Virus record (IMG/VR): IMGVR_UViG_3300029984_000001
Span: 199,572 to 263,571 of that record
DNA length: 64,000 bases
Reading direction: 5' to 3' (one strand)
Shown one piece after another: positions 11,617 through 57,661 of this stretch. The notes under the pieces are model-generated. The model saw only the letters and a list, made by a program, of their open reading frames with translations, was not told the DNA's origin and made no database searches. A program made the position numbers and the translations under genes. How positions within the stretch are numbered: the first letter of the stretch is position 1; each line of letters opens with the position of its first letter.

Positions 11617-13536
11617 ATGAAAATCGTAAAGAATAATGTAATTAATAAGGAAGCAACGAGATTATTTCAATCAGAGACATTAAAAGGATTAGCAGAATCA
11701 ATAATAACTTCAGCAGGACCACAAGGATCAGGTACTAAAATAATATTACATTTAGCAAACGATCCAGAGAGTCCTAATAGAAATGTACCTATAGTTAAAT
11801 ATAGTAAAGATGGTCATAGTATCTTAAGTTATATATCTCATTGTGATAATGGAATGCTTTGCAACTCTGTATGTAACGATGTTTATGAAATGACTACTTA
11901 TGTAAAGAAGAAAATTGGAGATAATTCAACCGCTACTGTATGTATGGCTTCACGAATATTTGATAATCTTGTTAAAGTAGAAACCGATACAAAACTTCCT
12001 CCAAGAGAAATAATCAAACAATTTAAAAAAGCTGTTGAAATGATTACAGTTAGAGTAAAAGAAAAAACACAAGAATTTACTCCTGAAGAAGCTTATAATA
12101 TTGCATACATATCTTCTAATGGTGATGAAGAAGTTGCAAATAACATAAAACAAATTTACGAAGAATTTGGTAAAGAAGTATATATAGATATTGGAATTTC
12201 GAATGATGAACAACATAAAATGAAAATAATGGATGGTATGAGTATTAGTACTGGATACAATAGTCCTGCTTATCGAAATGATTTGCAAAAGAATATTGCA
12301 TCTATTCCAAAACCAAGAATATACTATTTCCAAAATATGATTGATACTCCTGCTCAAATTGCATTATTAGCAGCAATTGTTGTAAAAAATATAACAGATC
12401 CTTACAGAACTAATAAATTAGAAAATGTAATTCCTACAGTAATATTAGCACCACAATTAGCTAATGATGCTATCGTTGAATTAAATGAAGTTATTAGACT
12501 TATGCAAATGTATGATAAACCTGAACATATTAAGAACAAACCACCGTTATTAATTGTTACTGGGATATTTGAAGATGAGGCCACAGATGATATTGCTAGA
12601 TTGTGTGGATGTCCTCCTATTAGAAAATATCAAAGTTTAGAACAACTAGAAAAAGATAAAGAATCAGGTAAAGCTCCTACTACTGAAACTATTGTAGATA
12701 ATTGGTATGGAAGTGCTGATGTAGTTGTAGCTGATGCTGTTAGTACTAAATTTATTAATCCATTATTAAAATATACAACTAAAGGTGAAGAGAGAAAAAG
12801 AGTATGTGAACAAAATAAAGAGAAATTTGTTCCTGCTGAAGATGATAATGAAGAAATCTTCAGTGCTCATTATAATTCATTAGTTACTGCATTAGAAGCT
12901 CAATTGGAATTAGAAATAAATAATAATGCTACTATGGATATTACAGGTTCATTAACTAGAAGAATCAATTCATTAAAAGCTAAAGTCGTAGAATATCAAG
13001 TTGGTGGTATTGCAATAGCTGATAGAGATTCTTTAAAAGATTCAGTTTGGGATGCTATAAGAAATTGTAGATCAGCGGCTAAATCTGGTGTTGGATTAGC
13101 ATGTAATATGGAAGGTTATTTTGCTTGTCTAGAAATATTGAACAATACAAAAGCAGATGATGATTCTACAGTTATCAAATTTGTAGAAATGATTCATGAT
13201 TCTTATGTAGAATATATATCTTCATTATATGAATTTACATTTGGTATTGATAAAGATGAATGTTTAAGATTATTAGAAACTAATTCTAGAACAAATGGAA
13301 TAGTAGATTTATCTCAAGGATATGATAAAGAAACTGTAGATAAGGTGATATACAATACAAAAATTAAATCATCTATAAATGCAGATATAGTTACATTAGA
13401 AGCTTTATCTAAAATATTATCTTTAATGATGACATGTGCTCAAACTCTTATACCAGAACCATTATTAGATTCATATACAGCATTTGTAGATAATAGAAAA
13501 ATTCAAGATAAATTAGTTAAAACATGTAGACTATAA
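11617..13536 (+). CDS. groEL: Phage chaperonin (GroEL-like, divergent)
   Basis: SAGPQG, SKDGHSIL, IGDNSTAT (GDGTTT equivalent), AYISSNGD, DAIRNCRSAAKSGV. Confidence 0.9.
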   Translation: MKIVKNNVINKEATRLFQSETLKGLAESIITSAGPQGSGTKIILHLANDPESPNRNVPIVKYSKDGHSILSYISHCDNGMLCNSVCNDVYEMTTYVKKKIGDNSTATVCMASRIFDNLVKVETDTKLPPREIIKQFKKAVEMITVRVKEKTQEFTPEEAYNIAYISSNGDEEVANNIKQIYEEFGKEVYIDIGISNDEQHKMKIMDGMSISTGYNSPAYRNDLQKNIASIPKPRIYYFQNMIDTPAQIALLAAIVVKNITDPYRTNKLENVIPTVILAPQLANDAIVELNEVIRLMQMYDKPEHIKNKPPLLIVTGIFEDEATDDIARLCGCPPIRKYQSLEQLEKDKESGKAPTTETIVDNWYGSADVVVADAVSTKFINPLLKYTTKGEERKRVCEQNKEKFVPAEDDNEEIFSAHYNSLVTALEAQLELEINNNATMDITGSLTRRINSLKAKVVEYQVGGIAIADRDSLKDSVWDAIRNCRSAAKSGVGLACNMEGYFACLEILNNTKADDDSTVIKFVEMIHDSYVEYISSLYEFTFGIDKDECLRLLETNSRTNGIVDLSQGYDKETVDKVIYNTKIKSSINADIVTLEALSKILSLMMTCAQTLIPEPLLDSYTAFVDNRKIQDKLVKTCRL

Positions 13537-13548
13537 TAATTAAAGTAT

Positions 13549-13580
13549 TACCGATGGATTAGTTTCCATCGGTTATTTTT
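13549..13580 (+). terminator. Rho-independent terminator
   Basis: accgatgga-ttagtt-tccatcggt followed by tattttt. Confidence 0.75.
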
Positions 13581-13591
13581 ACGGAGGTGTT

Positions 13592-14389
13592 GTGTTAATG
13601 GAAATGTCGTTCCCCGATTATATTGATAATCCTTCAGGAAGTAAAAATGGTGTATGGACTCATAGAACAATGTATAAAGATATGTATAATCAAAAACTTA
13701 CTAAGATATTAGTAAGAGAAACTGGTAAGATTAAATATCAACAATATGTATATAAAGACAATTACATTGTTCATTTTAAAATACCATCAGAAGTGATACC
13801 TGATTTCTATTATGATACTGTAATAGAGTTTTCTCCTGTAGATCAAATGATGATCAATAGTAACAATCTTAAAAGATATAATGTTAAATTTTATTCTAAC
13901 GATCCTGCTTTTGTATTCACATTCGCTTATTCGTTTTTACAGAATGATATGTTTATAAGAGACCTAGTTCCAAGAATGAGTAAAGAGGCTGTTAAAAAAG
14001 CTGCTGTACAAACTAACCCTAAGAATGAAGTTGGTTATGTAAAGTCTATTTATTTTACTTATATACTAATGGATAAATATAATCTATGGAATGCACAGGA
14101 TTATAAACAATATGGTAAAATATATTCAAAATCATCATTCTTAAAAGAAATTACTCATGCAGATGAAAAAGTAAAAGATAGAACTGATCAACAAGAAAAA
14201 ATTAATAAAGAGAAAAAAATAGACAAAGAGAAATTAAAGAATAGATCTAAATCAAATCCTAAAAATGTAACGAGTAGTAATAATGTTACAACTTCAAATA
14301 ATATAAAGAATAATTCTAAATCTAAAAATGTTAGTACAATTAAAAACATAGGAAAAAGTAAAGGTAATGTCAATTTTAATAAGTTTTAG
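13592..14389 (+). CDS. Conserved-looking hypothetical protein with basic low-complexity tail
   Basis: 265-aa ORF with SD ggaggt. Confidence 0.7.
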   Translation: MLMEMSFPDYIDNPSGSKNGVWTHRTMYKDMYNQKLTKILVRETGKIKYQQYVYKDNYIVHFKIPSEVIPDFYYDTVIEFSPVDQMMINSNNLKRYNVKFYSNDPAFVFTFAYSFLQNDMFIRDLVPRMSKEAVKKAAVQTNPKNEVGYVKSIYFTYILMDKYNLWNAQDYKQYGKIYSKSSFLKEITHADEKVKDRTDQQEKINKEKKIDKEKLKNRSKSNPKNVTSSNNVTTSNNIKNNSKSKNVSTIKNIGKSKGNVNFNKF

Positions 14390-14391
14390 AA

Positions 14392-14410
14392 TTATATATT
14401 ATACTATTGA
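14392..14410 (+). promoter_or_regulatory. Early-type promoter TTATATATTATA-N4-TGA
   Basis: ttatatattata ctat tga; motif recurs 10 times in the window. Confidence 0.65.
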
Positions 14411-14424
14411 GGAGGGATTATATT

Positions 14425-15939
14425 ATGAAAAAATTTATGACTAGAGAACCTATTAAAAAATTCATTAATGTTTCAGATTGGGAACCTGAACCAGAAGACA
14501 TAATAATAAATCAGATAAACGATTATGTATTAATTCCTGTATCTAAATACTTTAATGCAGATCAAACAATGGATTATTTTTCAGTAAGATCAAAGAAAGT
14601 TTATAATAAAATTAAAGTAAGAGCTTTAATAGTACATAAACTTAATTATTTCGAAAAGTTCTATGATACTGATAGAGAGTTATTAACTGTTTATGCTAAT
14701 ATTAAATACCTTATTGATTGTGAACCGAATTATAGTAAAGATGCATTGTTCTATGATCTCAAAAGATACATAATAAATGGACCATCCATATCATTAAAAA
14801 TGGATTATATGAATAAGGATAATTATAGACCAGCTAAAATTAAATTTAGTGGTACAGATAGGTTATTATATTATGATAATACTCATATAGCTATAATGAT
14901 GAGGATATCATTAACAATGACATTAATTATTCCTTTATTAACACACTTCGCTAATAAAAGGAAAGTTCAAATAATAGATGAATTTCTATTAGAAATATAC
15001 AGTTACATAATAAAGGAGTATGAAGATTTTGTAGATTTATTTGAAAAATTTACAGCAACTTGTTCTACTAATATAGCTAAGAATAAAAGAAACAATGCTA
15101 TATGGAATAACCAAGACATAAGAGCTATTAATCAATCAACACATGCAATATATTCTGTCAATAATATTATACTTAATCTTATGCCTAAGTATATATATAA
15201 TGATAGTCCAGTTACGCTTAATTATGCTAGTATAGGACAGGTAATAAAATATAAGGTAACCGACGCAGGATATGATTTTGCATATACTTCTTTATCATCT
15301 TCAGATAGGGATTTAGATGAAAATTCGTCTCTAGACAAATATGAGGCAATTCTTGTAAAAAGTGACGAATCACTATTCATTCAGAATAAGGTTAATGGTG
15401 CTACTACAATGTCTAGAATAAGAATGTATTTTGGTCCTTTCGATCAAAATGAAATTGAGTTCTATAGAAAAAGACTTTTATTAGATGATAAGAGTGTTAT
15501 ACATGCTTTACAAAAAGAATTAATTTTTAATATGTTCTATAAATACTTTGGTGATACTTCCTCTAGTAATACTATAACAGAAGATGATTATATAGTATTA
15601 TTATTAACAGCTAAGAAGATTTGTTTACAATCAGACTTACTTGTTTTACCTTGTGTGTTTAGTAGTAAGATAATCAAATATACAAAGAAAACAAAGTTAA
15701 ATAAAAAAGAAAAAGATAGGATGATTGCTTCTCCTATTTATAAAATGATTATGGAGAAATATAATAATAATAAAAAGGTAGAAGCTCAAATAGAAGAATG
15801 GGCAGCCACTATATTATCATGTGAATTTGAAATTATAGATAGTAATAGAGAATCAAATAGTACTGATTATGTTGTACTACCTAAGTTTCCTGATTATGTA
15901 GTAAATGAGGTATTGAAATTTGCTTCTTGGGTATCATAA
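14425..15939 (+). CDS. Candidate promoter-specificity (sigma-like) subunit of the non-virion RNAP, AR9 gp226-like
   Basis: About 500-aa helical protein under an early-type promoter, two genes downstream of the chaperonin as with AR9 gp228/gp226; called from synteny, not alignment. Confidence 0.5.
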   Translation: MKKFMTREPIKKFINVSDWEPEPEDIIINQINDYVLIPVSKYFNADQTMDYFSVRSKKVYNKIKVRALIVHKLNYFEKFYDTDRELLTVYANIKYLIDCEPNYSKDALFYDLKRYIINGPSISLKMDYMNKDNYRPAKIKFSGTDRLLYYDNTHIAIMMRISLTMTLIIPLLTHFANKRKVQIIDEFLLEIYSYIIKEYEDFVDLFEKFTATCSTNIAKNKRNNAIWNNQDIRAINQSTHAIYSVNNIILNLMPKYIYNDSPVTLNYASIGQVIKYKVTDAGYDFAYTSLSSSDRDLDENSSLDKYEAILVKSDESLFIQNKVNGATTMSRIRMYFGPFDQNEIEFYRKRLLLDDKSVIHALQKELIFNMFYKYFGDTSSSNTITEDDYIVLLLTAKKICLQSDLLVLPCVFSSKIIKYTKKTKLNKKEKDRMIASPIYKMIMEKYNNNKKVEAQIEEWAATILSCEFEIIDSNRESNSTDYVVLPKFPDYVVNEVLKFASWVS

Positions 15940-16986
15940 ATGGATAACAATACAATTGATAGGATAAATGAACAATTATTACGTTTACCGTCTGCTGAAT
16001 ACGCTCAGGGGAATTCGTGGATAATTGCAAGATGTAAAAATTGTCAAGATTCATTAAATCCTAATCATAAACATTTCGGTATTCATATACCCCAACACGA
16101 GAATGATGTTTATTACTACAATTGTTTTAAATGTCATGATGCTGGACAACTTTCAACTGACAATCTTATAGCATGGGGAATTTATGATTTAGATGTTATA
16201 GAAGGATTATCTAAATGGAATAAAAGGGTATTATCAAGACCAGAGAATAGAATGTATAAAGATCAAACTTATATAGTTAAAAATAATCATATAACTCAAA
16301 GTAGATTGACTGATGCTAAGTTGAATTATATTAATAATAGGCTCGGTATCAATATGACATATCAAGATATATTAGATAAGAAGATTATACTTAATCTTCA
16401 TGATTTCTTAATAGAAAATCATATAACAAGATTCTCTAGAAATCCTAATGTTGTAGATCAATTAGACAAAGCATTCTTGGGATTCTTATCCCAAGATAAT
16501 GCTTTTATTAATATGAGAAGATTAATAAATGAAGATAAGCTTATGAAACCATTACATAAAAGATATGTCAATTATAATATATTTGGCAAGTTTGATAATT
16601 CTCAAAGATACTATACAATACCAACTATAATAAGATTAGATAATCCAAAGAGAATTAAATTAAAAATTGCAGAAGGACCTTTTGATTTATTATCTATATT
16701 TTATAATATGTGTGACCAAGAAATAGATAATTGTATTTACTCTGCAATTACAGGTAGTAGTTATTTAAAAGTATTAGAATACTTTATAATAAAGAAAAAG
16801 TTAATAAATATAGAAGCAGATATATATACTGATAAAGATATATCTGATGCAAAGATGTATGACATTAAACAAATACTAAACGTATTTGGTATACCTTTAA
16901 CTGTGCATCGTAATATAGCTCCAAATCAAAAAGACTTTGGTGTTAAGTCATCACAGATACAAGATAAGATAATATATTTAGGATAG
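15940..16986 (+). CDS. dnaG: DNA primase (DnaG/TOPRIM type)
   Basis: Zn-binding CKNC...H...CFKC; TOPRIM IAEGPFD, YTDKD, KDFG. Confidence 0.85.
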   Translation: MDNNTIDRINEQLLRLPSAEYAQGNSWIIARCKNCQDSLNPNHKHFGIHIPQHENDVYYYNCFKCHDAGQLSTDNLIAWGIYDLDVIEGLSKWNKRVLSRPENRMYKDQTYIVKNNHITQSRLTDAKLNYINNRLGINMTYQDILDKKIILNLHDFLIENHITRFSRNPNVVDQLDKAFLGFLSQDNAFINMRRLINEDKLMKPLHKRYVNYNIFGKFDNSQRYYTIPTIIRLDNPKRIKLKIAEGPFDLLSIFYNMCDQEIDNCIYSAITGSSYLKVLEYFIIKKKLINIEADIYTDKDISDAKMYDIKQILNVFGIPLTVHRNIAPNQKDFGVKSSQIQDKIIYLG

Positions 16987-17022
16987 GGTTCGTCTCTATC
17001 CTTATTTTAAGGAGGAAAAATA

Positions 17023-22977: not shown

Positions 22978-23850
22978 CTACTCAATATTAAAGTTATATT
23001 TATTTGATATTTCGGTATGAGATTCTTTTCTTTTTATCCTACCAATTATACTTCTTTGTTGTTGAAATTCCCCTGGTAGTTTCAATTCATCTATAATTGC
23101 TCTAGTTGAATATCCTTTAGATAATAATTTACAAATGTTTTCTACATATGGAAAGAAATCTATTTGAGGTTTCTTCTCTTTAAATTTATATAATGTGGAT
23201 ATATGTTTCCATCTTTTACCTTTAATAATATGACTTACATTAAATCTATTATTTTCAGTATTTTCCATATTAGATTTTATTAAAGCATTTCCATATGAAT
23301 CTCCATCTTGAACATATTTGCAAATACTATGTACTTGTTCTTCTGTCCATTTACTCATACCATTATTTTCTCCATAAGTATTTTCTCCAGTACCCCAACC
23401 TCCATCTTCCTTGACAAATCTTGATTCAACATGTTTAGAAAATTCTCTATCTGTATCTTTATTTTGAAACTCATGTTCAAGATTTTCTAGTTGAGTACAC
23501 CATTCTAAATTACCATAGAATGCATCTGATCTACATAAATTTTTATGGTTTACTTGAGTTTTATTTATTGGGTCTGGATTAAATACATACATGGTAGCAA
23601 CCAAAATATGTACAAAGAAAGATTTTCTAGTAGAATCATTTAATTGTAAAGATACTGATAAATATCCATTAGATAGTGCTACCGATAATAAATTACCTTC
23701 TATATTTAAAAATCTACCATAATTACTTATCTTATAACCTGTTCTGATATTATAACATTGTAAATCTACCCATTGTTCTATAGGATTAGGATATTCTATT
23801 AATGGGTTTATACCTTGTGAGAAATCGTCTCTTATCATAAAACTTTTCAT
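22978..23850 (-). CDS. Intron-encoded HNH homing endonuclease (NUMOD4-like N-terminus)
   Basis: YKISNYGR, VHILVA, QVNHKN...NLEWCTQLENLEH; located between intron elements R and S. Confidence 0.92.
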   Translation of the reverse strand: MKSFMIRDDFSQGINPLIEYPNPIEQWVDLQCYNIRTGYKISNYGRFLNIEGNLLSVALSNGYLSVSLQLNDSTRKSFFVHILVATMYVFNPDPINKTQVNHKNLCRSDAFYGNLEWCTQLENLEHEFQNKDTDREFSKHVESRFVKEDGGWGTGENTYGENNGMSKWTEEQVHSICKYVQDGDSYGNALIKSNMENTENNRFNVSHIIKGKRWKHISTLYKFKEKKPQIDFFPYVENICKLLSKGYSTRAIIDELKLPGEFQQQRSIIGRIKRKESHTEISNKYNFNIE

Positions 23851-23866
23851 TTATTCTCATCTCCTT

Positions 23867-23885
23867 TCGTGTATATAATATATAA
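23867..23885 (-). promoter_or_regulatory. Early-type promoter inside the intron, driving the HNH gene
   Basis: Minus strand ttatatattata taca cga followed by SD aaggag. Confidence 0.65.
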
Positions 23886-24094
23886 CTTTAATATCTTTTG
23901 ATAGTCGTTGAACGTTCCCTATACATCATCATATAAGGCTTCGATGCTGATTACCCAATTATTAATCATTCTCAAGCATTCACGCTTATAGTTTCCCATT
24001 ACGTTGTAGCTGATTAACTTACAAGGGCGTTCCAGCAGTTAAGGTAGTTTTTGTTTCGACGCACATCGTCAAGAAGACTACAATGGTGAGGTTT

Positions 24095-25522
24095 ATAGTC
24101 TCCTTCTACTTTTTTGAGATGCAAATTACTGATGTTTAAAGTATCTCTAAATCTAGATGATGTATTAGTACCTATATCTTCCTCTCTTATTTTTGGATAA
24201 TAAGGATAGAATTCATTATTTATATAAATACCTTCTGTTTCTACTGTAGATGAAATTCTAATTTTATTTGGGAATTGACCGAAATAAGTATTCATAGGAT
24301 ATCTTGTTAATAATACATGTTTATCTTTAGACATTTCTACAGCAGCCATATAAAAAATATCACACCAACATAATCTTCTATGATAAATAGATGATACATC
24401 TTCTTTATCCATTTCATCTTTAGTATCTGTATGAGGAGCATTGTTACCTTTAAAGTACATATATCTCATTTCACCTGTAGTTAATTCTACTTCTATAGGA
24501 ATGAATCTATTTGAATATCCATGTATAAATCTTTTCATTTGTTTTTTAATTACATCATCTGAAAATTGCACATAAGGATTCTTTACTTGTACTACTTTAG
24601 GATTACCCTTATCATCATATAATACTTTTTCATTAGTACCACCGAATTCATTTTCAAAGAATCTTCTACACCAGAATAATATATACGGATATAGATTTGC
24701 TAAGGCTGATGCTAACGGTAAAGCACAATGTCTTAAATCAACCATTAAATCATCTACTGATTCTACATTTAATTCAGGAGCCGATATAACTAATCTAGAA
24801 GAATAATCTGAAGTCTTTGCCATAACTGTTCTTTTTATGATTCCATATTTCTTTCCTAGATTTGGTTCTTGAGTAAACCAATCATATACTCTAACTAATA
24901 ATTCCTGTATTCTTCCTATAGTAGCAGATGTCATTGAAAATCCAAAATCATCGGATTCTCTTAATGCAGCTGAGGCTATAATTAAAGAATTATATATCTT
25001 ATTAATTTCTCCTACTCCTAAAGTTTTATTTCCAGTATTTACATCTCTATAGTATGCAGGTATTACTATATACTTATCTAAAAATAATGTATTATTCTTT
25101 TTATTTCTATTTATAAAATCTATATTTATATCTCTTTTGAGAGAGTCTGTAGATTTTATTTTTATCTTATCTATATTATTTTTTAAGAAGTCTACCCCAT
25201 TTTCTCCATTCTCATCTTCTTCTAATTGTCCTTGAGAATTAATCTTAAAATTCTTAGTCCCATGAACACATTCTTTTATTTTTCTATCCATTCTACACCA
25301 TATTTTATATGATAATGGATCTATGAAATTTTTGTGTAGGTCAATATAGGCAAATATATTGGCTCTTTGATCTTTAGATAAACCAAAAACTTCATTAGAT
25401 AATAAACCGTCTGATGTAGGTACTCCATTACTAAAAAAATATATAGGATTGGTAATCTGTTTTAAATTATTCTCTTTAATTAATCGACTAGGACTTAATG
25501 TCTCTAACTCTAAATGTTTCAT
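24095..25522 (-). CDS. rpoC: RNA polymerase beta' N-terminal subunit, exon 1 (probably virion RNAP); spliced product 544 aa
   Basis: DGLLSNEVFG, VIPAYYRD, KTSDYSSRLVIS, VLLTRYP, GDY; in a late structural operon. Confidence 0.9.
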
Positions 25523-54427: not shown

Positions 54428-56308
54428 TTATCTTATTTTAGACATAAGATTTATAATCTTTTTATAATCATTACCTTTATCTTCTCTCTCTAATGATCTA
54501 AATGCCATTTCTTCGTAAAGATCATCTCCAGTATCAAAGATAAATTTAGCAACTTCATTATTCTCATCTATAATACAGAAACACATTAAGTTATATGATT
54601 CCATTATAGGTCTAATTATTTTTGGATCTTCTAAATCAATATCTTCCATTTTCTTTAGATATTCTGCTTCTTCTTGAGTTATAGTTAAAGATGTAATTGC
54701 AGTAGCATCATTAATTGATCCGATAGTTCTATTGATTCTACTTTTAATTCCTCTTCTTTCTAATACTTTCCAAAGTTTAGAAGATGATCCTTTTCTTGAT
54801 TGAGAAAGAGCATCCAATTTAGCTCTATCAATAGCAAATAAGAAATCTCTACAGAATGATATTTCTCTAGTAGTAGCTTTTATCAAACCTATTAAGAAAT
54901 GTTTATCTACATGCTTAATGGTGAGCCTTTTTAATATATCATCTGAATTAACAGGATATAATTTAGCCTTAACTCCTATAACAGTTTGAGATTGTATTGG
55001 TCTACCATTATCCCCTTTAGATATGTAATTTACTATCATAGTAGTAGGAACCAATTCATTTGGTTTCTTAACATCATTATCTAAAAGTTGATTCTTTAAG
55101 TAATCAATTCTATTTCTTACTACATCAGCATCAAATCTAGACTTGTCTAAATTCATTTTATCTGCAAATTTTTCATCTTCTCTTCCATCTCTCTTTTCTT
55201 TATAATTTTGATTTAATTTATCTTGATCTTTTTGGTAATTAAATTTAGATAATTGATTATTATAATCTCTTACATCATTTTCAATATCTTTATTAAATTT
55301 ATTCACAGCTAATTGATGAGTTCTATCAGATTGAGATGTTTGATTATTCATTTTCTCTCTATCATTATCCATTCTTTCTTGATCTAATGCATTTCTGGTA
55401 TCAGATTCCATCCTTTTAAATTCGAAATCATTAGCATCTTTATTCACTTGATAATCTGACCCAGCATTTTTATAAGTCATATCAAAACCAGAATTAGTTG
55501 TTTTAATCATTATATCTTTTTCAGCTCTGTCTACAACTAAAGCGTAATCTGGGTTACTACTATAATAACCAACATCATATGATATACCATGTGCAGTTTG
55601 TCTTATATCTCCATTAGGGTCTCCAATTGCTTCAGTGACAGCTTTTTTATTTTTACCAATATTCATATATTTTGGGTCTGTATCTATGATACTGTCTAGA
55701 TAATCTAATTCTTCCATATCTGAATCTGTTAGTTTTTTATGTTTCTTTGATTTAGATTCATTTAATATATATGACTCATTTAAAGAATTTTTAGGTTTAA
55801 TGATTAAGTAGTCGGCTAGAGAAGATTCTTCTCTGATACTATTAGGTAAGTAATTGCTAAGGTTTCTTAAATCATTAGAATATTTTACATATAATTCTTC
55901 ATTATCAACCATAACAGCACCTTCTAATACTAAGTGATCCATCATGTTCATAAATTTATCTATTGTCATAGATCCATCTAATTTTAAATTAGTATGGAAA
56001 TTTTTAAGGTATGTAATTCCATCTTCAGCATTTGATATAGACAAAGCACTAAATAACATTTGAAGCATACTTACAGCTTTACGTTCCATTGCTTTTGAAA
56101 ACATAGAAGCATTGTCTATTGTCATACCTCTAGATACTACACAAGGAAATACTAAAGTTAAATTAGCTGTAGCCGCAGCTATTGATCTAAAACTTTTACC
56201 TTGGGATCTATTACTAATTGCATCTATAGCATCAGCATTTTTCAATTCTTCTAACATATCCATAGCATCTCTAATTACTGTTTCATGTATCATTTTACAA
56301 TAATTCAT
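54428..56308 (-). CDS. Putative virion structural protein with central charged insert
   Basis: Late promoter; leader MNYCKMIHE; LNE and VTE sites before a D/K/N/Q-rich coiled region. Confidence 0.6.
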   Translation of the reverse strand: MNYCKMIHETVIRDAMDMLEELKNADAIDAISNRSQGKSFRSIAAATANLTLVFPCVVSRGMTIDNASMFSKAMERKAVSMLQMLFSALSISNAEDGITYLKNFHTNLKLDGSMTIDKFMNMMDHLVLEGAVMVDNEELYVKYSNDLRNLSNYLPNSIREESSLADYLIIKPKNSLNESYILNESKSKKHKKLTDSDMEELDYLDSIIDTDPKYMNIGKNKKAVTEAIGDPNGDIRQTAHGISYDVGYYSSNPDYALVVDRAEKDIMIKTTNSGFDMTYKNAGSDYQVNKDANDFEFKRMESDTRNALDQERMDNDREKMNNQTSQSDRTHQLAVNKFNKDIENDVRDYNNQLSKFNYQKDQDKLNQNYKEKRDGREDEKFADKMNLDKSRFDADVVRNRIDYLKNQLLDNDVKKPNELVPTTMIVNYISKGDNGRPIQSQTVIGVKAKLYPVNSDDILKRLTIKHVDKHFLIGLIKATTREISFCRDFLFAIDRAKLDALSQSRKGSSSKLWKVLERRGIKSRINRTIGSINDATAITSLTITQEEAEYLKKMEDIDLEDPKIIRPIMESYNLMCFCIIDENNEVAKFIFDTGDDLYEEMAFRSLEREDKGNDYKKIINLMSKIR

Positions 56309-56333
56309 TTTTATTCCTCCTAACTGATTAAAT

Positions 56334-56345
56334 TAGTAATATGTT
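56334..56345 (-). promoter_or_regulatory. Late promoter AACA-N6-TA
   Basis: Minus strand aaca tattac ta. Confidence 0.7.
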
Positions 56346-56433
56346 AAATTCCTTAGATTCTAGAAAAAATAAAAAGGGGTATTTAAACCCCTTTTCTATG
56401 TACAATATGTAATTAATTATGTATTATGTGCGA

Positions 56434-56568
56434 TTAAACGTATACTCTCCACATCCAAATTTTAAATATAGTATGTTTACAAGCAAGTTCTTTAAGTTCT
56501 TCTAGAATACTGATATTCTCGTATTCATATTCTTTTTGTAATATTCCTGCATTTGTAATTTCTGTCAT
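56434..56568 (-). CDS. 44-aa protein (below the ORF-track cutoff)
   Basis: SD aagggga; MTEITNAG...WMWRVYV*; early-type promoter upstream and terminator at about 56371-56396. Confidence 0.55.
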   Translation of the reverse strand: MTEITNAGILQKEYEYENISILEELKELACKHTIFKIWMWRVYV

Positions 56569-56632
56569 TTTGTAATCTCCCCTTTATGTAAGTTGTGATA
56601 TCTCTCTTAAATCTAATAGACTACATCTCCTT

Positions 56633-56651
56633 TCAGTATTATAATATATAA
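56633..56651 (-). promoter_or_regulatory. Early-type promoter
   Basis: Minus strand ttatatattata atac tga. Confidence 0.6.
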
Positions 56652-56673
56652 TTTAAATATTATTTAATCTGGA

Positions 56674-56685
56674 AACATTTCAATA
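56674..56685 (+). promoter_or_regulatory. Late promoter AACA-N6-TA
   Basis: aaca tttcaa ta. Confidence 0.7.
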
Positions 56686-56707
56686 ATAAGAAAGGAGGTT
56701 ATATATT

Positions 56708-57661
56708 ATGGCTTATCATATTTCTTCCAATGATATAAAAAATATAAGATTAGCAAATGGTATATACCAAAGAGCTGATTTAGAATGGTATGATAAATTT
56801 TTTAGATTTGGATGTTTGAATCCTAGTGATCATTTATCGGGAACAAGGGAATATATATTTTGGACAAGACCAGATTTAAATATATTAAAACCAAACGGTG
56901 AATTGAATACTGCAATAGAGAATGATTCTTTCTTTAAAGATTGTAGGAAAAGGTATAGAAAAGTAATAGAACAATTACAAGGTTCTTTAACTAATAAACC
57001 ATTTGTTAATTTATTATCTGGTATGGTAAAATCATCTCTAGAAATTCCTGGATACTCTTGTAATGATATAGATGGTCCAGCAACATCATATGGAGATCAA
57101 ATAAGATATAGAGGTTCTACATTAACTTCTGAATCAGATGGATATGAGGTCTCTTTAGAATTTCAAGATACTAAATACTTAGAATTATATACATTCTTAA
57201 AAATATACGATACATATGAAAATTATAAACAGATGGGTGTCATTGGTCCTGATGAAAAATATACATTAAATAAACAACTTCACGATCAAATGTGTTTATA
57301 TAAAGTAATAGTTTCAGAAGATTTTGAAACTATCATATTTTGGGCAAAAGGTTGGGGTGTTTATCCTAAAAATGTTCCTGTAGATGTATTTTCAAATATG
57401 GATACAATGACTGATACGTTAAGATATTCTATTAATTTTCACGTAGAATGGTTTGATGATATGGACCCTGCTATATTATCAGAATTACATTGCTTAGGTA
57501 ATGATCCTTCTTATACTGGAGATGGAAATACTATACCTTTATATGATGTAGACAATAAAATGGTTAATGGAGTTATGTGCGATATACCGTATATTATATA
57601 CGAAGATAGTAAACTCAATACACCTACAGGTGGTAATTACAAATTAAAATGGAGGGGGTAA
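56708..57661 (+). CDS. Tail tube-fold protein (gp19/gp54-like)
   Basis: SLEIPG...EVSLEFQD...WGVYPKNVP...YSINFHVEW. Confidence 0.6.
   Translation: MAYHISSNDIKNIRLANGIYQRADLEWYDKFFRFGCLNPSDHLSGTREYIFWTRPDLNILKPNGELNTAIENDSFFKDCRKRYRKVIEQLQGSLTNKPFVNLLSGMVKSSLEIPGYSCNDIDGPATSYGDQIRYRGSTLTSESDGYEVSLEFQDTKYLELYTFLKIYDTYENYKQMGVIGPDEKYTLNKQLHDQMCLYKVIVSEDFETIIFWAKGWGVYPKNVPVDVFSNMDTMTDTLRYSINFHVEWFDDMDPAILSELHCLGNDPSYTGDGNTIPLYDVDNKMVNGVMCDIPYIIYEDSKLNTPTGGNYKLKWRG

What the first reader, a model, noticed from the sequence alone, without database searches (positions are those of the whole stretch)
14425..15939. Orphan ~500-aa gene is probably the sigma-like specificity subunit of the non-virion RNAP
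Seen: gene order is chaperonin - unknown - this gene - primase, and it has its own early-type promoter. Established: AR9 gp228 is the chaperonin and gp226 is the promoter-specificity subunit. Inference: this is a gp226 orthologue that reads the AAC[AT]-N6-T[AG] promoters. Its base-binding pockets would predict U versus T specificity.
Basis: inference. Interest (0 to 1): 0.65.

Follow-up and report, generated by a model that had tools for sequence, protein, structure and literature searches.

The report
Sigma-like subunit of jumbo-phage RNA polymerase
This unannotated 504-residue gene of an uncultivated peat jumbo phage is a distant but clear orthologue of AR9 gp226, the sigma-like subunit that aims the phage's own RNA polymerase at late promoters. 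Unlike AR9, this phage probably has ordinary thymine DNA and lacks the residue pattern that makes gp226 uracil-specific.

Summary
The ORF at 14425-15939 (+) encodes 504 aa, has a strong ribosome-binding site, and has no Pfam, PHROG or NCBIfam match. It lies in the order chaperonin, gp227-like, this gene, primase, exactly as AR9 g228-g225, and an AR9-type early promoter sits directly in front of it.

The gp226 interpretation is supported:
- A profile of the family hits only AR9 gp226 in the PDB (E 2e-23, full length). Profile-profile probability is 99.8%.
- The AlphaFold model matches gp226 at Z 27.3 and phiKZ gp68 at Z about 12. The next best match has Z 3.6.
- The genome encodes all four split beta/beta' core subunits and has no second gp226-like ORF.
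- The AR9 late-promoter motif AAC[AT]-N6-TA is enriched about fourfold upstream of genes, only at that spacing and orientation. It is depleted in the window as a whole.

The twist concerns uracil versus thymine. The uracil-discriminating Val206 signature is invariant in seven cultured gp226 phages but is replaced here (Ala225, with a different conserved helix). The genome encodes a bona fide ThyA and lacks the dU-pathway genes, and 38 of 41 relatives carry ThyA or ThyX against 0 of 7 cultured phages. The subunit therefore most likely reads a thymine version of the AR9-type promoter. This part is inferred, not shown.

The parts
14387..14409 (+). Early-type (virion-RNAP type) promoter. The core TATATATTAT is at 14393-14402, followed by 6 nt, with the predicted start at G14409.
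   Evidence: It is one mismatch from the AR9 early consensus AAATATATATTAT-N6-G (PMC5312081). The window holds 8 copies against 0.84 expected. Most genome-wide copies lie upstream of genes, including the nvRNAP beta'N and betaC genes. AR9 g226 has an annotated early promoter at the same place.
14410..14417 (+). Ribosome-binding site GAGGAGGG, 7 nt before the ATG.
   Evidence: Read directly from the sequence. AGGAGG-type words are the most enriched words upstream of genes in this genome.
14425..15939 (+). CDS of 504 aa (P0001): a gp226-family sigma-like promoter-specificity subunit of the non-virion RNA polymerase.
   Evidence: The family profile hits only PDB 7S01_A (E 2.2e-23, profile 29-497 against chain 10-459). 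hhalign to cultured gp226 homologues gives probability 99.8%, E 5e-29, over 445 columns. BLASTP to gp226 gives E 2e-7 and to phiR1-37 g245 E 4e-14. The AF2 model has pLDDT 84.9, with Z 27.3 to 7s01_A.
15094..15123 (+). Codons 224-233: the counterpart of the gp226 '2.1bis' helix that forms the -10 base pocket. Ala225 aligns with Val206, Ile226 with Ile207, Trp227 with Trp208 and Asn229 with Tyr210.
   Evidence: The HMM, BLAST and hhalign alignments agree on this register. The AF2 model has a short helix at 225-233 between two long helices. In the family, W227, Q230, I232 and R233 are (near-)invariant while position 225 varies.
15268..15339 (+). Codons 282-305: a low-confidence acidic and serine-rich linker, the counterpart of the gp226 sigma-finger (gp226 residues 265-294).
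   Evidence: pLDDT is below 50 at 282-301 and 303-305. The segment aligns to the gp226 finger. The domain limits of gp226 come from PMC9209446.
15340..15936 (+). Codons 306-504: the C-terminal domain shared with the gp226 CTD and the phiKZ gp68 CTD.
   Evidence: VIA-align gives 7um1_A Z 14.7, rmsd 3.0 A, 167 aligned residues. It gives 8que_B Z 12.1 and 7ogp_B Z 11.6.
11617..13536 (+). GroEL-like chaperonin (AR9 gp228-like), a synteny anchor.
   Evidence: phrog_5725 E 9e-39; Pfam Cpn60_TCP1 scores 34.2 bits, just under its 34.3 cut-off. BLASTP to AR9 gp228 gives E 4e-21.
13592..14389 (+). gp227-like protein of unknown function (possibly starting at ATG 13598), a synteny anchor.
   Evidence: phrog_20045 E 2e-30. 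BLASTP to AR9 gp227 gives E 5e-24. It lies upstream of the homologue in 78 of 80 related loci.
15940..16986 (+). DNA primase (AR9 gp225-like). Its ATG directly abuts the stop codon of the gp226-like gene, so the two are probably co-transcribed.
   Evidence: phrog_19847 E 2e-38. BLASTP to AR9 gp225 gives E 1e-19. It lies downstream in 61 of 80 related loci.

Best explanation
The gene encodes the fifth, sigma-like promoter-specificity subunit of this jumbo phage's non-virion multisubunit RNA polymerase. It is an orthologue of AR9 gp226 and a remote relative of phiKZ gp68.

Proposed mechanism. The injected virion RNAP transcribes the gene early, from the AR9-type early promoter at 14393-14409, together with the genes of the split beta/beta' core. 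The product binds that core through its sigma2-like region, finger and sigma4-like helix. The resulting holoenzyme starts transcription at the many AAC[AT]-N6-TA sites that lie about 20-30 nt upstream of late and continuously expressed genes. By analogy with AR9, it would do so by reading the template-strand complement (3'-TTG[TA]-5') in a pocket formed by the 2.1bis helix and the betaN subunit.

Because the phage encodes a thymidylate synthase and the Val206-type uracil discriminator is not conserved, the pocket most likely accepts thymine.

Shown: homology, fold, synteny, presence of the core subunits, and the distribution of the promoter motifs. Inferred: binding to the core, template-strand reading, and T rather than U.
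For: Homology and fold:
- The A1 profile hits only 7S01_A in the PDB, E 2.2e-23, nearly end to end.
- hhalign gives probability 99.8%.
- Foldseek and VIA-align top hits are exclusively gp226 and gp68 (Z 27.3, 23.5 and 14.7 for gp226; about 12 for gp68; next Z 3.6, the E. coli sigma32 sigma2 region).
- The architecture of NTD, disordered finger and CTD matches gp226.

Context:
- The four-gene synteny is identical to AR9 and phiR1-37 and is conserved in most of 80 related loci.
- The genome encodes orthologues of gp089, gp105, gp154 and gp270, plus virion RNAP subunits.
- This is the only gp226-like ORF in the genome.

Promoters:
- The early motif precedes this gene and the beta'N and betaC genes.
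- AAC[AT]-N6-TA in upstream regions occurs 71 times in the sense orientation, 21 times antisense, against 17.1 expected. Neighbouring spacings of 4, 5 and 7 are not enriched. 51 of 180 upstream regions have a site 15-40 nt before the ATG.
- The same enrichment appears in 72 related loci: 89 sense, 39 antisense, 26.6 expected.
- The motif is depleted in the window overall: 104 against 188.8 +/- 12.6.

T rather than U:
- ThyA is at G000:20118-20891 (PF00303, E 9e-91; NCBIfam equivalog NF002495, 345.8 bits against a cut-off of 327).
- There is no PF00383 deaminase, no PF06941 dTMPase and no match to AR9 Ugi.
- 0 of 7 cultured gp226 phages have ThyA or ThyX, against 38 of 41 relatives.
- The Val206 signature is invariant in the cultured set but is Ala here and variable in the clade.
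Against: - No biochemical or expression data exist. No RNA run holds this phage, so no transcription start is mapped.
- The complex prediction with the beta'N fragment gave no verdict.
- Identity to gp226 is only about 20-23%. Single-sequence searches against the PDB and tblastn of gp226 against the genome find nothing.
- A thymidylate synthase gene argues for thymine DNA but does not prove it.
- Ala225 keeps a C-beta, and in AR9 it is the C-beta and side chain of Val206 that would clash with a thymine methyl. Bulky residues also occur at this column in relatives, so the pocket geometry cannot be read from the alignment.
- betaN Arg363 is conserved, but Lys375 aligns with Ile.
- The late motif also precedes replication genes, so it does not separate 'late' genes cleanly.
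Confidence: 0.8

Rival explanations
1. It is a gp226 orthologue, but the phage genome contains deoxyuridine as AR9 does. The subunit would be uracil-specific through a differently built pocket, and the ThyA gene would serve another purpose or be a passenger.
For: The late-promoter consensus is essentially the same as AR9's. The phage is AR9-like in gene content and order. betaN Arg363, which stacks on the -10 uracil, is conserved. Ala225 retains a C-beta. Two relatives (G002, G005) lack ThyA and ThyX and carry a deaminase, so dU members may exist within the clade.
Against: ThyA passes an equivalog cut-off. No Dcd, Dtm or Ugi homologue is found. All seven cultured gp226 phages lack ThyA and ThyX, and the two that were checked (AR9, phiR1-37) carry the deaminase. 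The invariant D-x-V-[IM]-W-x-[YF] signature is absent.
Confidence: 0.12
2. It works like phiKZ gp68 rather than like gp226. It would be an obligatory structural subunit needed to assemble an active polymerase, with promoter recognition on double-stranded thymine DNA, not a dissociable sigma-like factor that reads the template strand.
For: The CTD matches gp68 at Z about 12. phiKZ has thymine DNA and its gp68 is required for assembly (PMC9209446). This phage probably also has thymine DNA.
Against: The protein is far closer to gp226 than to gp68 (Z 27.3 over both domains against about 12, mostly the CTD; profile hits go to gp226 only). The late motif is the AR9 type, not the phiKZ TATG type. Synteny and early promoters are AR9-like.
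Confidence: 0.06
3. It is not a transcription factor. It would be a replication accessory or structural protein that merely shares a helical fold and a neighbourhood with the primase.
For: Its stop codon abuts the primase start. The gp227-like neighbour's homologue in phiR1-37 is noted as a structural protein.
Against: Full-length, two-domain, highly specific similarity to gp226 and gp68, with nothing else above Z 3.6. In AR9 the same neighbourhood holds the experimentally proven nvRNAP subunit (PMC5449584).
Confidence: 0.02

Closest known systems
Bacillus phage AR9/PBS1 gp226 (PDB 7S00/7S01/7UM0/7UM1), promoter-specificity subunit of the non-virion RNAP
   Same: Full-length homology (profile E 2e-23; hhalign 99.8%). 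The same two-domain fold with a finger linker (Z 27.3). The same gene neighbourhood (chaperonin, gp227, gp226, primase). The same kind of early promoter in front of the gene. The same late-promoter consensus in the genome (AACA/T-N6-TA). Trp208, Ile207 and Tyr263 counterparts are conserved.
   Different: Only about 20-23% identity, and 40 residues longer. The uracil-discriminating Val206 is Ala, Tyr210 is Asn, and the 2.1bis helix carries a different clade-wide signature (W-x-x-Q-x-I-R). The genome has ThyA and lacks the dCTP deaminase, dTMPase and Ugi of the dU phages.
Yersinia phage phiR1-37 g245 (annotated 'RNA polymerase')
   Same: It is the only hit in the GenBank phage collection (tblastn E 7e-5; pairwise E 4e-14). 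The synteny is the same, with one extra gene before the primase.
   Different: phiR1-37 has dU DNA, keeps the D-x-V-I-W-x-Y signature, and lacks ThyA and ThyX.
Pseudomonas phage phiKZ gp68 (PDB 7OGP/7OGR/8QUE/9RJS)
   Same: The C-terminal domain fold is the same (Z 11.4-12.1, rmsd about 4 A over about 165 residues). It is also the fifth subunit of a split-subunit phage RNAP, in a thymine-DNA genome.
   Different: There is no detectable sequence similarity. The promoter differs (TATG), the protein is required for core assembly, and the genomic context differs.
Bacterial sigma-70 family (group 3/4, e.g. sigmaE, sigma32)
   Same: By analogy with gp226, the region around residues 200-340 should supply sigma2-like, finger and sigma4.1-like elements. 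The best non-phage structural hit is the sigma2 part of E. coli sigma32 (Z 3.6, model 143-286).
   Different: There are no Pfam sigma domains, the Z score is not significant, and the rest of the protein has unrelated folds. gp226 reads the template strand, whereas sigma reads the non-template strand.

Membership tests
gp226/gp68 family (fifth subunit of jumbo-phage non-virion RNAP) | Sequence homology to gp226 over both domains | tested here: met
   hmmsearch of profile A1 against the PDB finds only 7S01_A, E 2.2e-23, profile 29-497 against chain 10-459. hhalign A1 against A2 gives probability 99.8%, 445 columns. BLASTP gives E 2e-7.
gp226/gp68 family (fifth subunit of jumbo-phage non-virion RNAP) | Fold: helical NTD with a sigma2-like part, flexible finger linker, and a CTD shared with gp68 | tested here: met
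   The AF2 model has pLDDT 84.9 with a disordered stretch at 282-305. Z is 27.3 to 7s01_A, 14.7 to the gp226 CTD and 11.4-12.1 to gp68; the next hit is 3.6. Foldseek gives E 2.5e-14 and 2.6e-5.
gp226/gp68 family (fifth subunit of jumbo-phage non-virion RNAP) | Genome encodes the split beta/beta' non-virion core subunits | tested here: met
   tblastn against AR9 finds orthologues of gp089, gp105, gp154 and gp270. The beta'N ORFs hit 7S01_d at E 1.5e-35 and 2.2e-6.
gp226/gp68 family (fifth subunit of jumbo-phage non-virion RNAP) | Single copy, in the conserved chaperonin / gp227 / gp226 / primase neighbourhood | tested here: met
   Searches show the synteny, its conservation across relatives, and that this is the only gp226-like ORF in the 263.6-kb genome.
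gp226/gp68 family (fifth subunit of jumbo-phage non-virion RNAP) | Physically binds the RNAP core and confers promoter-specific initiation | not testable with these tools
   Complex prediction gave no verdict and no RNA data exist. The only indirect support is the enrichment of the AR9-type late motif upstream of genes.
Uracil-specific gp226 subgroup (AR9, PBS1, BpSp, LPJP1, Staphylococcus jumbo phages, phiR1-37) | 2.1bis helix signature D-x-V-[IM]-W-x-[YF], with the invariant Val206 that excludes thymine | tested here: not met
   The cultured set is invariant. The window protein has N-A-I-W-N-N (Ala225, Asn229). This column varies in the clade (P, V, G, T, S, I, A, L, K and others).
Uracil-specific gp226 subgroup (AR9, PBS1, BpSp, LPJP1, Staphylococcus jumbo phages, phiR1-37) | betaN residues completing the -10 uracil pocket (gp105 Arg363, Lys375) | tested here: inconclusive
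   In a single pairwise BLASTP, Arg363 aligns with Arg and Lys375 aligns with Ile.
Uracil-specific gp226 subgroup (AR9, PBS1, BpSp, LPJP1, Staphylococcus jumbo phages, phiR1-37) | Genome built for dU DNA: no thymidylate synthase, with dCTP deaminase, dTMPase or dTTPase, and Ugi present | tested here: not met
   ThyA is present and passes the equivalog cut-off. PF00383, PF06941 and the AR9 Ugi, g151 and g221 homologues are absent. The cultured set has 0 of 7 with ThyA or ThyX; AR9 and phiR1-37, the two checked, carry PF00383.
Uracil-specific gp226 subgroup (AR9, PBS1, BpSp, LPJP1, Staphylococcus jumbo phages, phiR1-37) | Late promoter consensus AACA-N6-T(A/G) | tested here: met
   AACA-N6-TA occurs 40 times against 9.2 expected, and AACT-N6-TA 31 times against 7.9. 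The enrichment is specific to spacing and strand, and the sites cluster 20-29 nt before the ATG.
Bacterial sigma-70 family | Recognisable sigma region 2 / region 4 domains | tested here: not met
   No Pfam or NCBIfam hit. The only structural echo is Z 3.6 to the sigma32 sigma2 region.

The most novel reading that the evidence does not exclude
A large, uncultivated clade of AR9-like jumbo phages has ordinary thymine DNA. It comprises at least 215 protein clusters and 124 IMG/VR loci, and this member recurs in peat metagenomes. The clade nevertheless keeps the AR9 transcription scheme, including a gp226-type factor that reads the template-strand -10 element, now as 3'-TTG(T/A)-5'. This would be a natural counterpart of the engineered V206G enzyme. 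It would imply that uracil specificity in AR9-type phages is a lineage-specific specialisation of a more general template-strand-reading sigma-like factor.
Probability: 0.55. Interest if true: 0.6.

Novelty: new variant of a known kind. Interest (0 to 1): 0.45.

Why it matters
gp226 is the only known RNAP specificity factor that reads the -10 element on the template strand and distinguishes uracil from thymine. So far only about a dozen close homologues, all from dU phages, have been described.

This gene represents a much larger and more divergent branch. It keeps the AR9-type promoter motifs but sits in genomes that make dTMP, and it has a different, clade-conserved base-pocket helix. That gives three things:
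- A firm annotation for an orphan gene family in environmental jumbo phages.
- A natural test bed for how the U/T discrimination arose.
- A question of selectivity: how does such a short promoter stay selective for phage DNA when host and phage share thymine? Part of the answer may be the strong depletion of the motif inside the phage's own genes.

Tried and rejected
- Single-sequence searches were blank. Pfam, PHROGs and NCBIfam, phmmer against the PDB, megablast against phages and the genome search 'own' with gp226 found nothing. They were replaced by profile searches and a six-frame phmmer search.
- Complex prediction (beta'N first ORF plus residues 150-345) scored 0.00, which is no verdict. 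It is not used for or against binding.
- No RNA run holds the phage. Transcription starts could therefore not be mapped, and read laying was not used, because contigs cannot show RNA ends.
- I looked for a within-clade link between a Val at the 206-equivalent column and the absence of thymidylate synthase. It is not clean. G005 has A-V-I-W and lacks ThyA and ThyX, but G002 also lacks them with P-L-W, and other Val-bearing members were not resolved.
- The fate of gp105 Lys375 rests on one pairwise alignment and is left open.
- The careful phylogeny did not finish, so only the quick tree is cited, and no root or direction of change is claimed.
- The beta'N gene is interrupted.
- The large representative protein search was not needed and was not run.
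- No alternative genetic code was used.
Full report
**1. The observation**

The window is AT-rich, with GC about 0.22-0.28. It is the last 64 kb of a 263,571-bp IMG/VR virus record that CheckV rates 100% complete. An ORF runs from ATG 14425 to the stop at 15937-15939 and encodes 504 aa. GAGGAGGG at 14410-14417 is a strong ribosome-binding site 7 nt upstream.

The protein has no Pfam, PHROG or NCBIfam hit and no single-sequence PDB hit, so 'orphan' is fair.
- a GroEL-like chaperonin at 11617-13536;
- a protein of unknown function at 13592-14389;
- this gene;
- a primase at 15940-16986, whose ATG abuts this gene's stop.

**2. Homology to gp226**

The only hit in the GenBank phage collection is Yersinia phage phiR1-37 g245 (tblastn E 7e-5; pairwise E 4e-14). 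g245 in turn hits PDB 7S01 chain A, which is AR9 gp226, at E 6e-18. Direct BLASTP of the window protein to gp226 gives E 2e-7 and 23% identity over about 430 colinear residues.

The word-index search found 215 unnamed metagenomic relatives. A 40-sequence alignment of them (A1) was used as a profile. It hits only gp226 in the whole PDB, at E 2.2e-23, from profile position 29 to 497 and chain residue 10 to 459. Profile-profile comparison with six cultured gp226 homologues gives probability 99.8% and E 5e-29 over 445 columns.

**3. Fold**

The AlphaFold2 model has mean pLDDT 84.9. It has a helical N-terminal part, a disordered stretch at 282-305 and a C-terminal domain. This matches the published gp226 plan: NTD 1-264, finger 265-294, CTD 295-464 (PMC9209446).

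Foldseek against the PDB lists gp226 (E 2.5e-14 and 1.5e-11) and phiKZ gp68 (E 2.6e-5), and nothing else below 0.5 apart from further gp226 and gp68 entries. VIA-align results:

| Target | Z | Detail |
|---|---|---|
| 7s01_A (gp226) | 27.3 | 431 aligned residues |
| 7um0_A (gp226) | 23.5 | |
| gp226 CTD alone (7um1_A) | 14.7 | rmsd 3.0 A |
| four gp68 entries | 11.4-12.1 | |
| E. coli sigma32, sigma2 part | 3.6 | next best hit |

The global rmsd values are large because the two domains are oriented differently in the model. The domain-level matches are tight.

**4. Context**

AR9's own record shows g228 chaperonin, g227, an early promoter, g226 'non-virion RNAP subunit' and g225 primase. All four window proteins match their AR9 counterparts, and phiR1-37 has the same order.

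Among 80 related IMG/VR loci, the gp227-like gene is upstream in 78 and the primase downstream in 61.

tblastn of all genome ORFs against AR9 finds orthologues of the four nvRNAP core subunits (gp089, gp105, gp154, gp270), of virion RNAP subunits, and of many replication and virion genes.

The beta'N gene is interrupted by an HNH endonuclease ORF, as in AR9. I searched its two ORFs separately; they match 7S01_d residues 51-335 and 333-421.

A six-frame phmmer search of the whole genome with gp226 and g245 finds only this ORF (E 0.0025 and 2.7e-11; next best 0.28). There is therefore no better orthologue elsewhere.

**5. Promoters**

The sequence TATATATTAT-ACTATT-G at 14393-14409 differs in one position from the AR9 early consensus AAATATATATTAT-N6-G(+1) (PMC5312081; AR9 and phiR1-37 examples). 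The window has 8 such sites against 0.84 expected from shuffles. The genome has 34 matches to the pattern, most of them just upstream of genes on the coding strand, with an extended consensus TATRRTTATATATTATA-N4-TG. These include sites before the nvRNAP beta'N and betaC genes. The gene is therefore very probably an early gene, co-regulated with the polymerase core, as in AR9.

For the late class I counted every 4-mer-N5-7-T[AG] pattern in 180 upstream regions:
- Apart from ribosome-binding-site and early-promoter words, the top pattern is AACA-N6-TA (40 against 9.2 expected), followed by AACT-N6-TA (31 against 7.9).
- AAC[AT]-Nx-TA is enriched at x = 6 (71 sense, 21 antisense, 17.1 expected). 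It is also enriched at x = 3, which reflects an internal conserved TA in the same sites. It is not enriched at x = 4, 5 or 7.
- Half of the sites (37 of 74) put the predicted start 20-29 nt before the ATG.
- 51 of 180 upstream regions have a site at 15-40 nt.
- They precede homologues of virion proteins, portal, terminase and virion RNAP beta, but also several replication genes.
- The same enrichment is seen in 72 distinct related loci: 89 sense, 39 antisense, 26.6 expected.
- In the window as a whole the motif is strongly depleted: 104 against 188.8 +/- 12.6, and all 100 shuffles have more. This is what one expects of a short functional promoter word that is avoided elsewhere.

This is the AR9 late consensus AACA-N6-T(A/G) (PMC5312081). 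In AR9 the gp226 holoenzyme reads it on the template strand (PMC5449584, PMC9209446).

**6. Uracil or thymine**

In AR9 the -10 uracil sits between gp226 Ile207 and betaN Arg363. Its C5 atom is 3.9 A from the C-beta of Val206. V206G lets the enzyme accept thymine, and the valine is absolutely conserved in the homologues from dU phages (PMC9209446).

I confirmed that conservation in seven cultured phages (AR9, BpSp, Listeria LPJP1, Staphylococcus Machias, S6 and SA1, phiR1-37). All have T-x-Y-x-D-x-V-[IM]-W-x-[YF].

Three independent alignments (BLAST, HMM, hhalign) and the predicted short helix at 225-233 place the window residues as follows:

| AR9 gp226 (paper numbering) | Window protein |
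|---|---|
| Val206 | Ala225 |
| Ile207 | Ile226 |
| Trp208 | Trp227 |
| Tyr210 | Asn229 |

In the clade the Val206 column is variable (P, V, G, T, S, I, A, L, K and others). A different set is (near-)invariant: N224, W227, Q230, I232, R233. Tyr263 is kept as Tyr283. betaN Arg363 is kept, and Lys375 aligns with Ile.

On the metabolic side, the genome encodes a full-length ThyA (PF00303, E 9e-91). It passes the NCBIfam equivalog cut-off for thymidylate synthase (345.8 bits against 327). The genome has no PF00383 deaminase, no PF06941 nucleotidase, and no match to AR9 Ugi, g151 or g221. These are the enzymes now tied to dU-DNA synthesis in PBS1-type phages (PMC12697855).

| Genome set | ThyA or ThyX |
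|---|---|
| Cultured gp226 phages | 0 of 7 |
| Near-complete relatives of the window phage | 38 of 41: 8 ThyA, 30 ThyX, never both |

AR9 and phiR1-37, the two cultured phages checked, carry the deaminase.

In a quick maximum-likelihood tree the 62 metagenomic proteins form one supported group (SH-aLRT 97), apart from the cultured proteins. I draw no root or direction from that tree.

**7. Conclusion**

The gene is a gp226-family sigma-like subunit of the non-virion RNAP; my confidence in this is about 0.9. That it directs initiation at the AAC[AT]-N6-TA sites is a well-founded inference.

That it reads thymine rather than uracil is the more novel part. I put it at about 0.6-0.7. The metabolic contrast is strong, but the pocket geometry cannot be derived from sequence: Ala keeps a C-beta, and bulky residues occur at that column in relatives.

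It is known that homologues of the fifth subunit occur in all jumbo phages with split RNAPs (PMC7598289), so the existence of the gene is expected. What is new is this divergent, large environmental branch, which combines AR9-type promoters with a thymidylate-synthase-bearing genome and a rebuilt base-pocket helix.

The phage recurs in at least 19 peat metagenome runs. No RNA data are available.

**8. Limits**

- The complex prediction gave no verdict.
- No transcription starts are mapped.
- No alternative genetic code, no reads tool and no large representative search were used.
- The interrupted beta'N gene was handled ORF by ORF, without joining.

Noticed in passing
whole window (sites listed): The late-promoter word AACWN6TA is strongly depleted in the window overall (104 sites against 188.8 +/- 12.6 in dinucleotide shuffles). 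At the same time it is about fourfold enriched just upstream of genes. This suggests selection against spurious nvRNAP start sites.
   Followed up: partly
outside the window: G000:63085-65918 (locus L088:286-3119): The nvRNAP beta'N gene is split into two ORFs by an HNH endonuclease ORF. The position is the same as the AR9 g270/g271 intron (matches to 7S01_d residues 51-335 and 333-421). The ORFs were searched separately and not joined.
   Followed up: partly
outside the window: G000:185535-188395 (-) and G000:179257-182945 (-): The DNA polymerase catalytic subunit (AR9 g152-like) lies in two ORFs and the large terminase (AR9 g121-like) in three. This suggests further introns, inteins or homing-endonuclease insertions, as in AR9.
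   Followed up: no
window 22978-23850 (-); also G000:64530-65303 and G000:102902-103522: Three ORFs resemble the AR9 HNH homing endonuclease g271. The one in the window has an early-type promoter just upstream, at 23868-23884 (-).
   Followed up: no
window 24014-25522 (-): A homologue of the virion RNAP beta'N subunit (AR9 g145, 33% identity over 415 aa) lies 8 kb downstream of the gp226-like gene, on the opposite strand.
   Followed up: no
related genomes G002 (locus L015) and G005 (locus L019): These two near-complete relatives lack both ThyA and ThyX but carry a PF00383 deaminase, the profile of dU phages. G005's protein has A-V-I-W at the pocket. In the quick tree the two fall in neighbouring sister pairs of one subclade. 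They may be deoxyuridine-DNA members of the clade.
   Followed up: partly
related genomes, e.g. G021:162920-164011 and G016:191854-192939: The ThyX (PF02511) matches in 30 relatives lie in unusually long open frames (386-580 aa). In most of them there are two separated hit stretches, suggesting an insertion within, or a fusion to, the ThyX domain.
   Followed up: no
window 13592-14389 (+): The gp227-like protein has a low-complexity Lys/Asn/Ser-rich C-terminal tail (about residues 195-265). Its phiR1-37 homologue g244 is noted as a phage structural protein, yet the gene is conserved next to the RNAP subunit gene in 78 of 80 loci.
   Followed up: no
window 13500-17000: Near-identical sequence is held by at least 19 separate peat metagenome runs, and none is an RNA run. 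The phage is a recurrent member of peat communities, and its host is unknown. The low GC and the strong AGGAGG ribosome-binding sites suggest a Firmicutes-like host.
   Followed up: partly
window 56308-56708 (divergent intergenic region): This region carries late-type sites for both flanking virion-protein genes (56334-56345 on the minus strand, 56674-56685 on the plus strand) and an early-type motif at 56634-56650 (-). This resembles AR9's 'continuously expressed' genes, which have both promoter classes.
   Followed up: no
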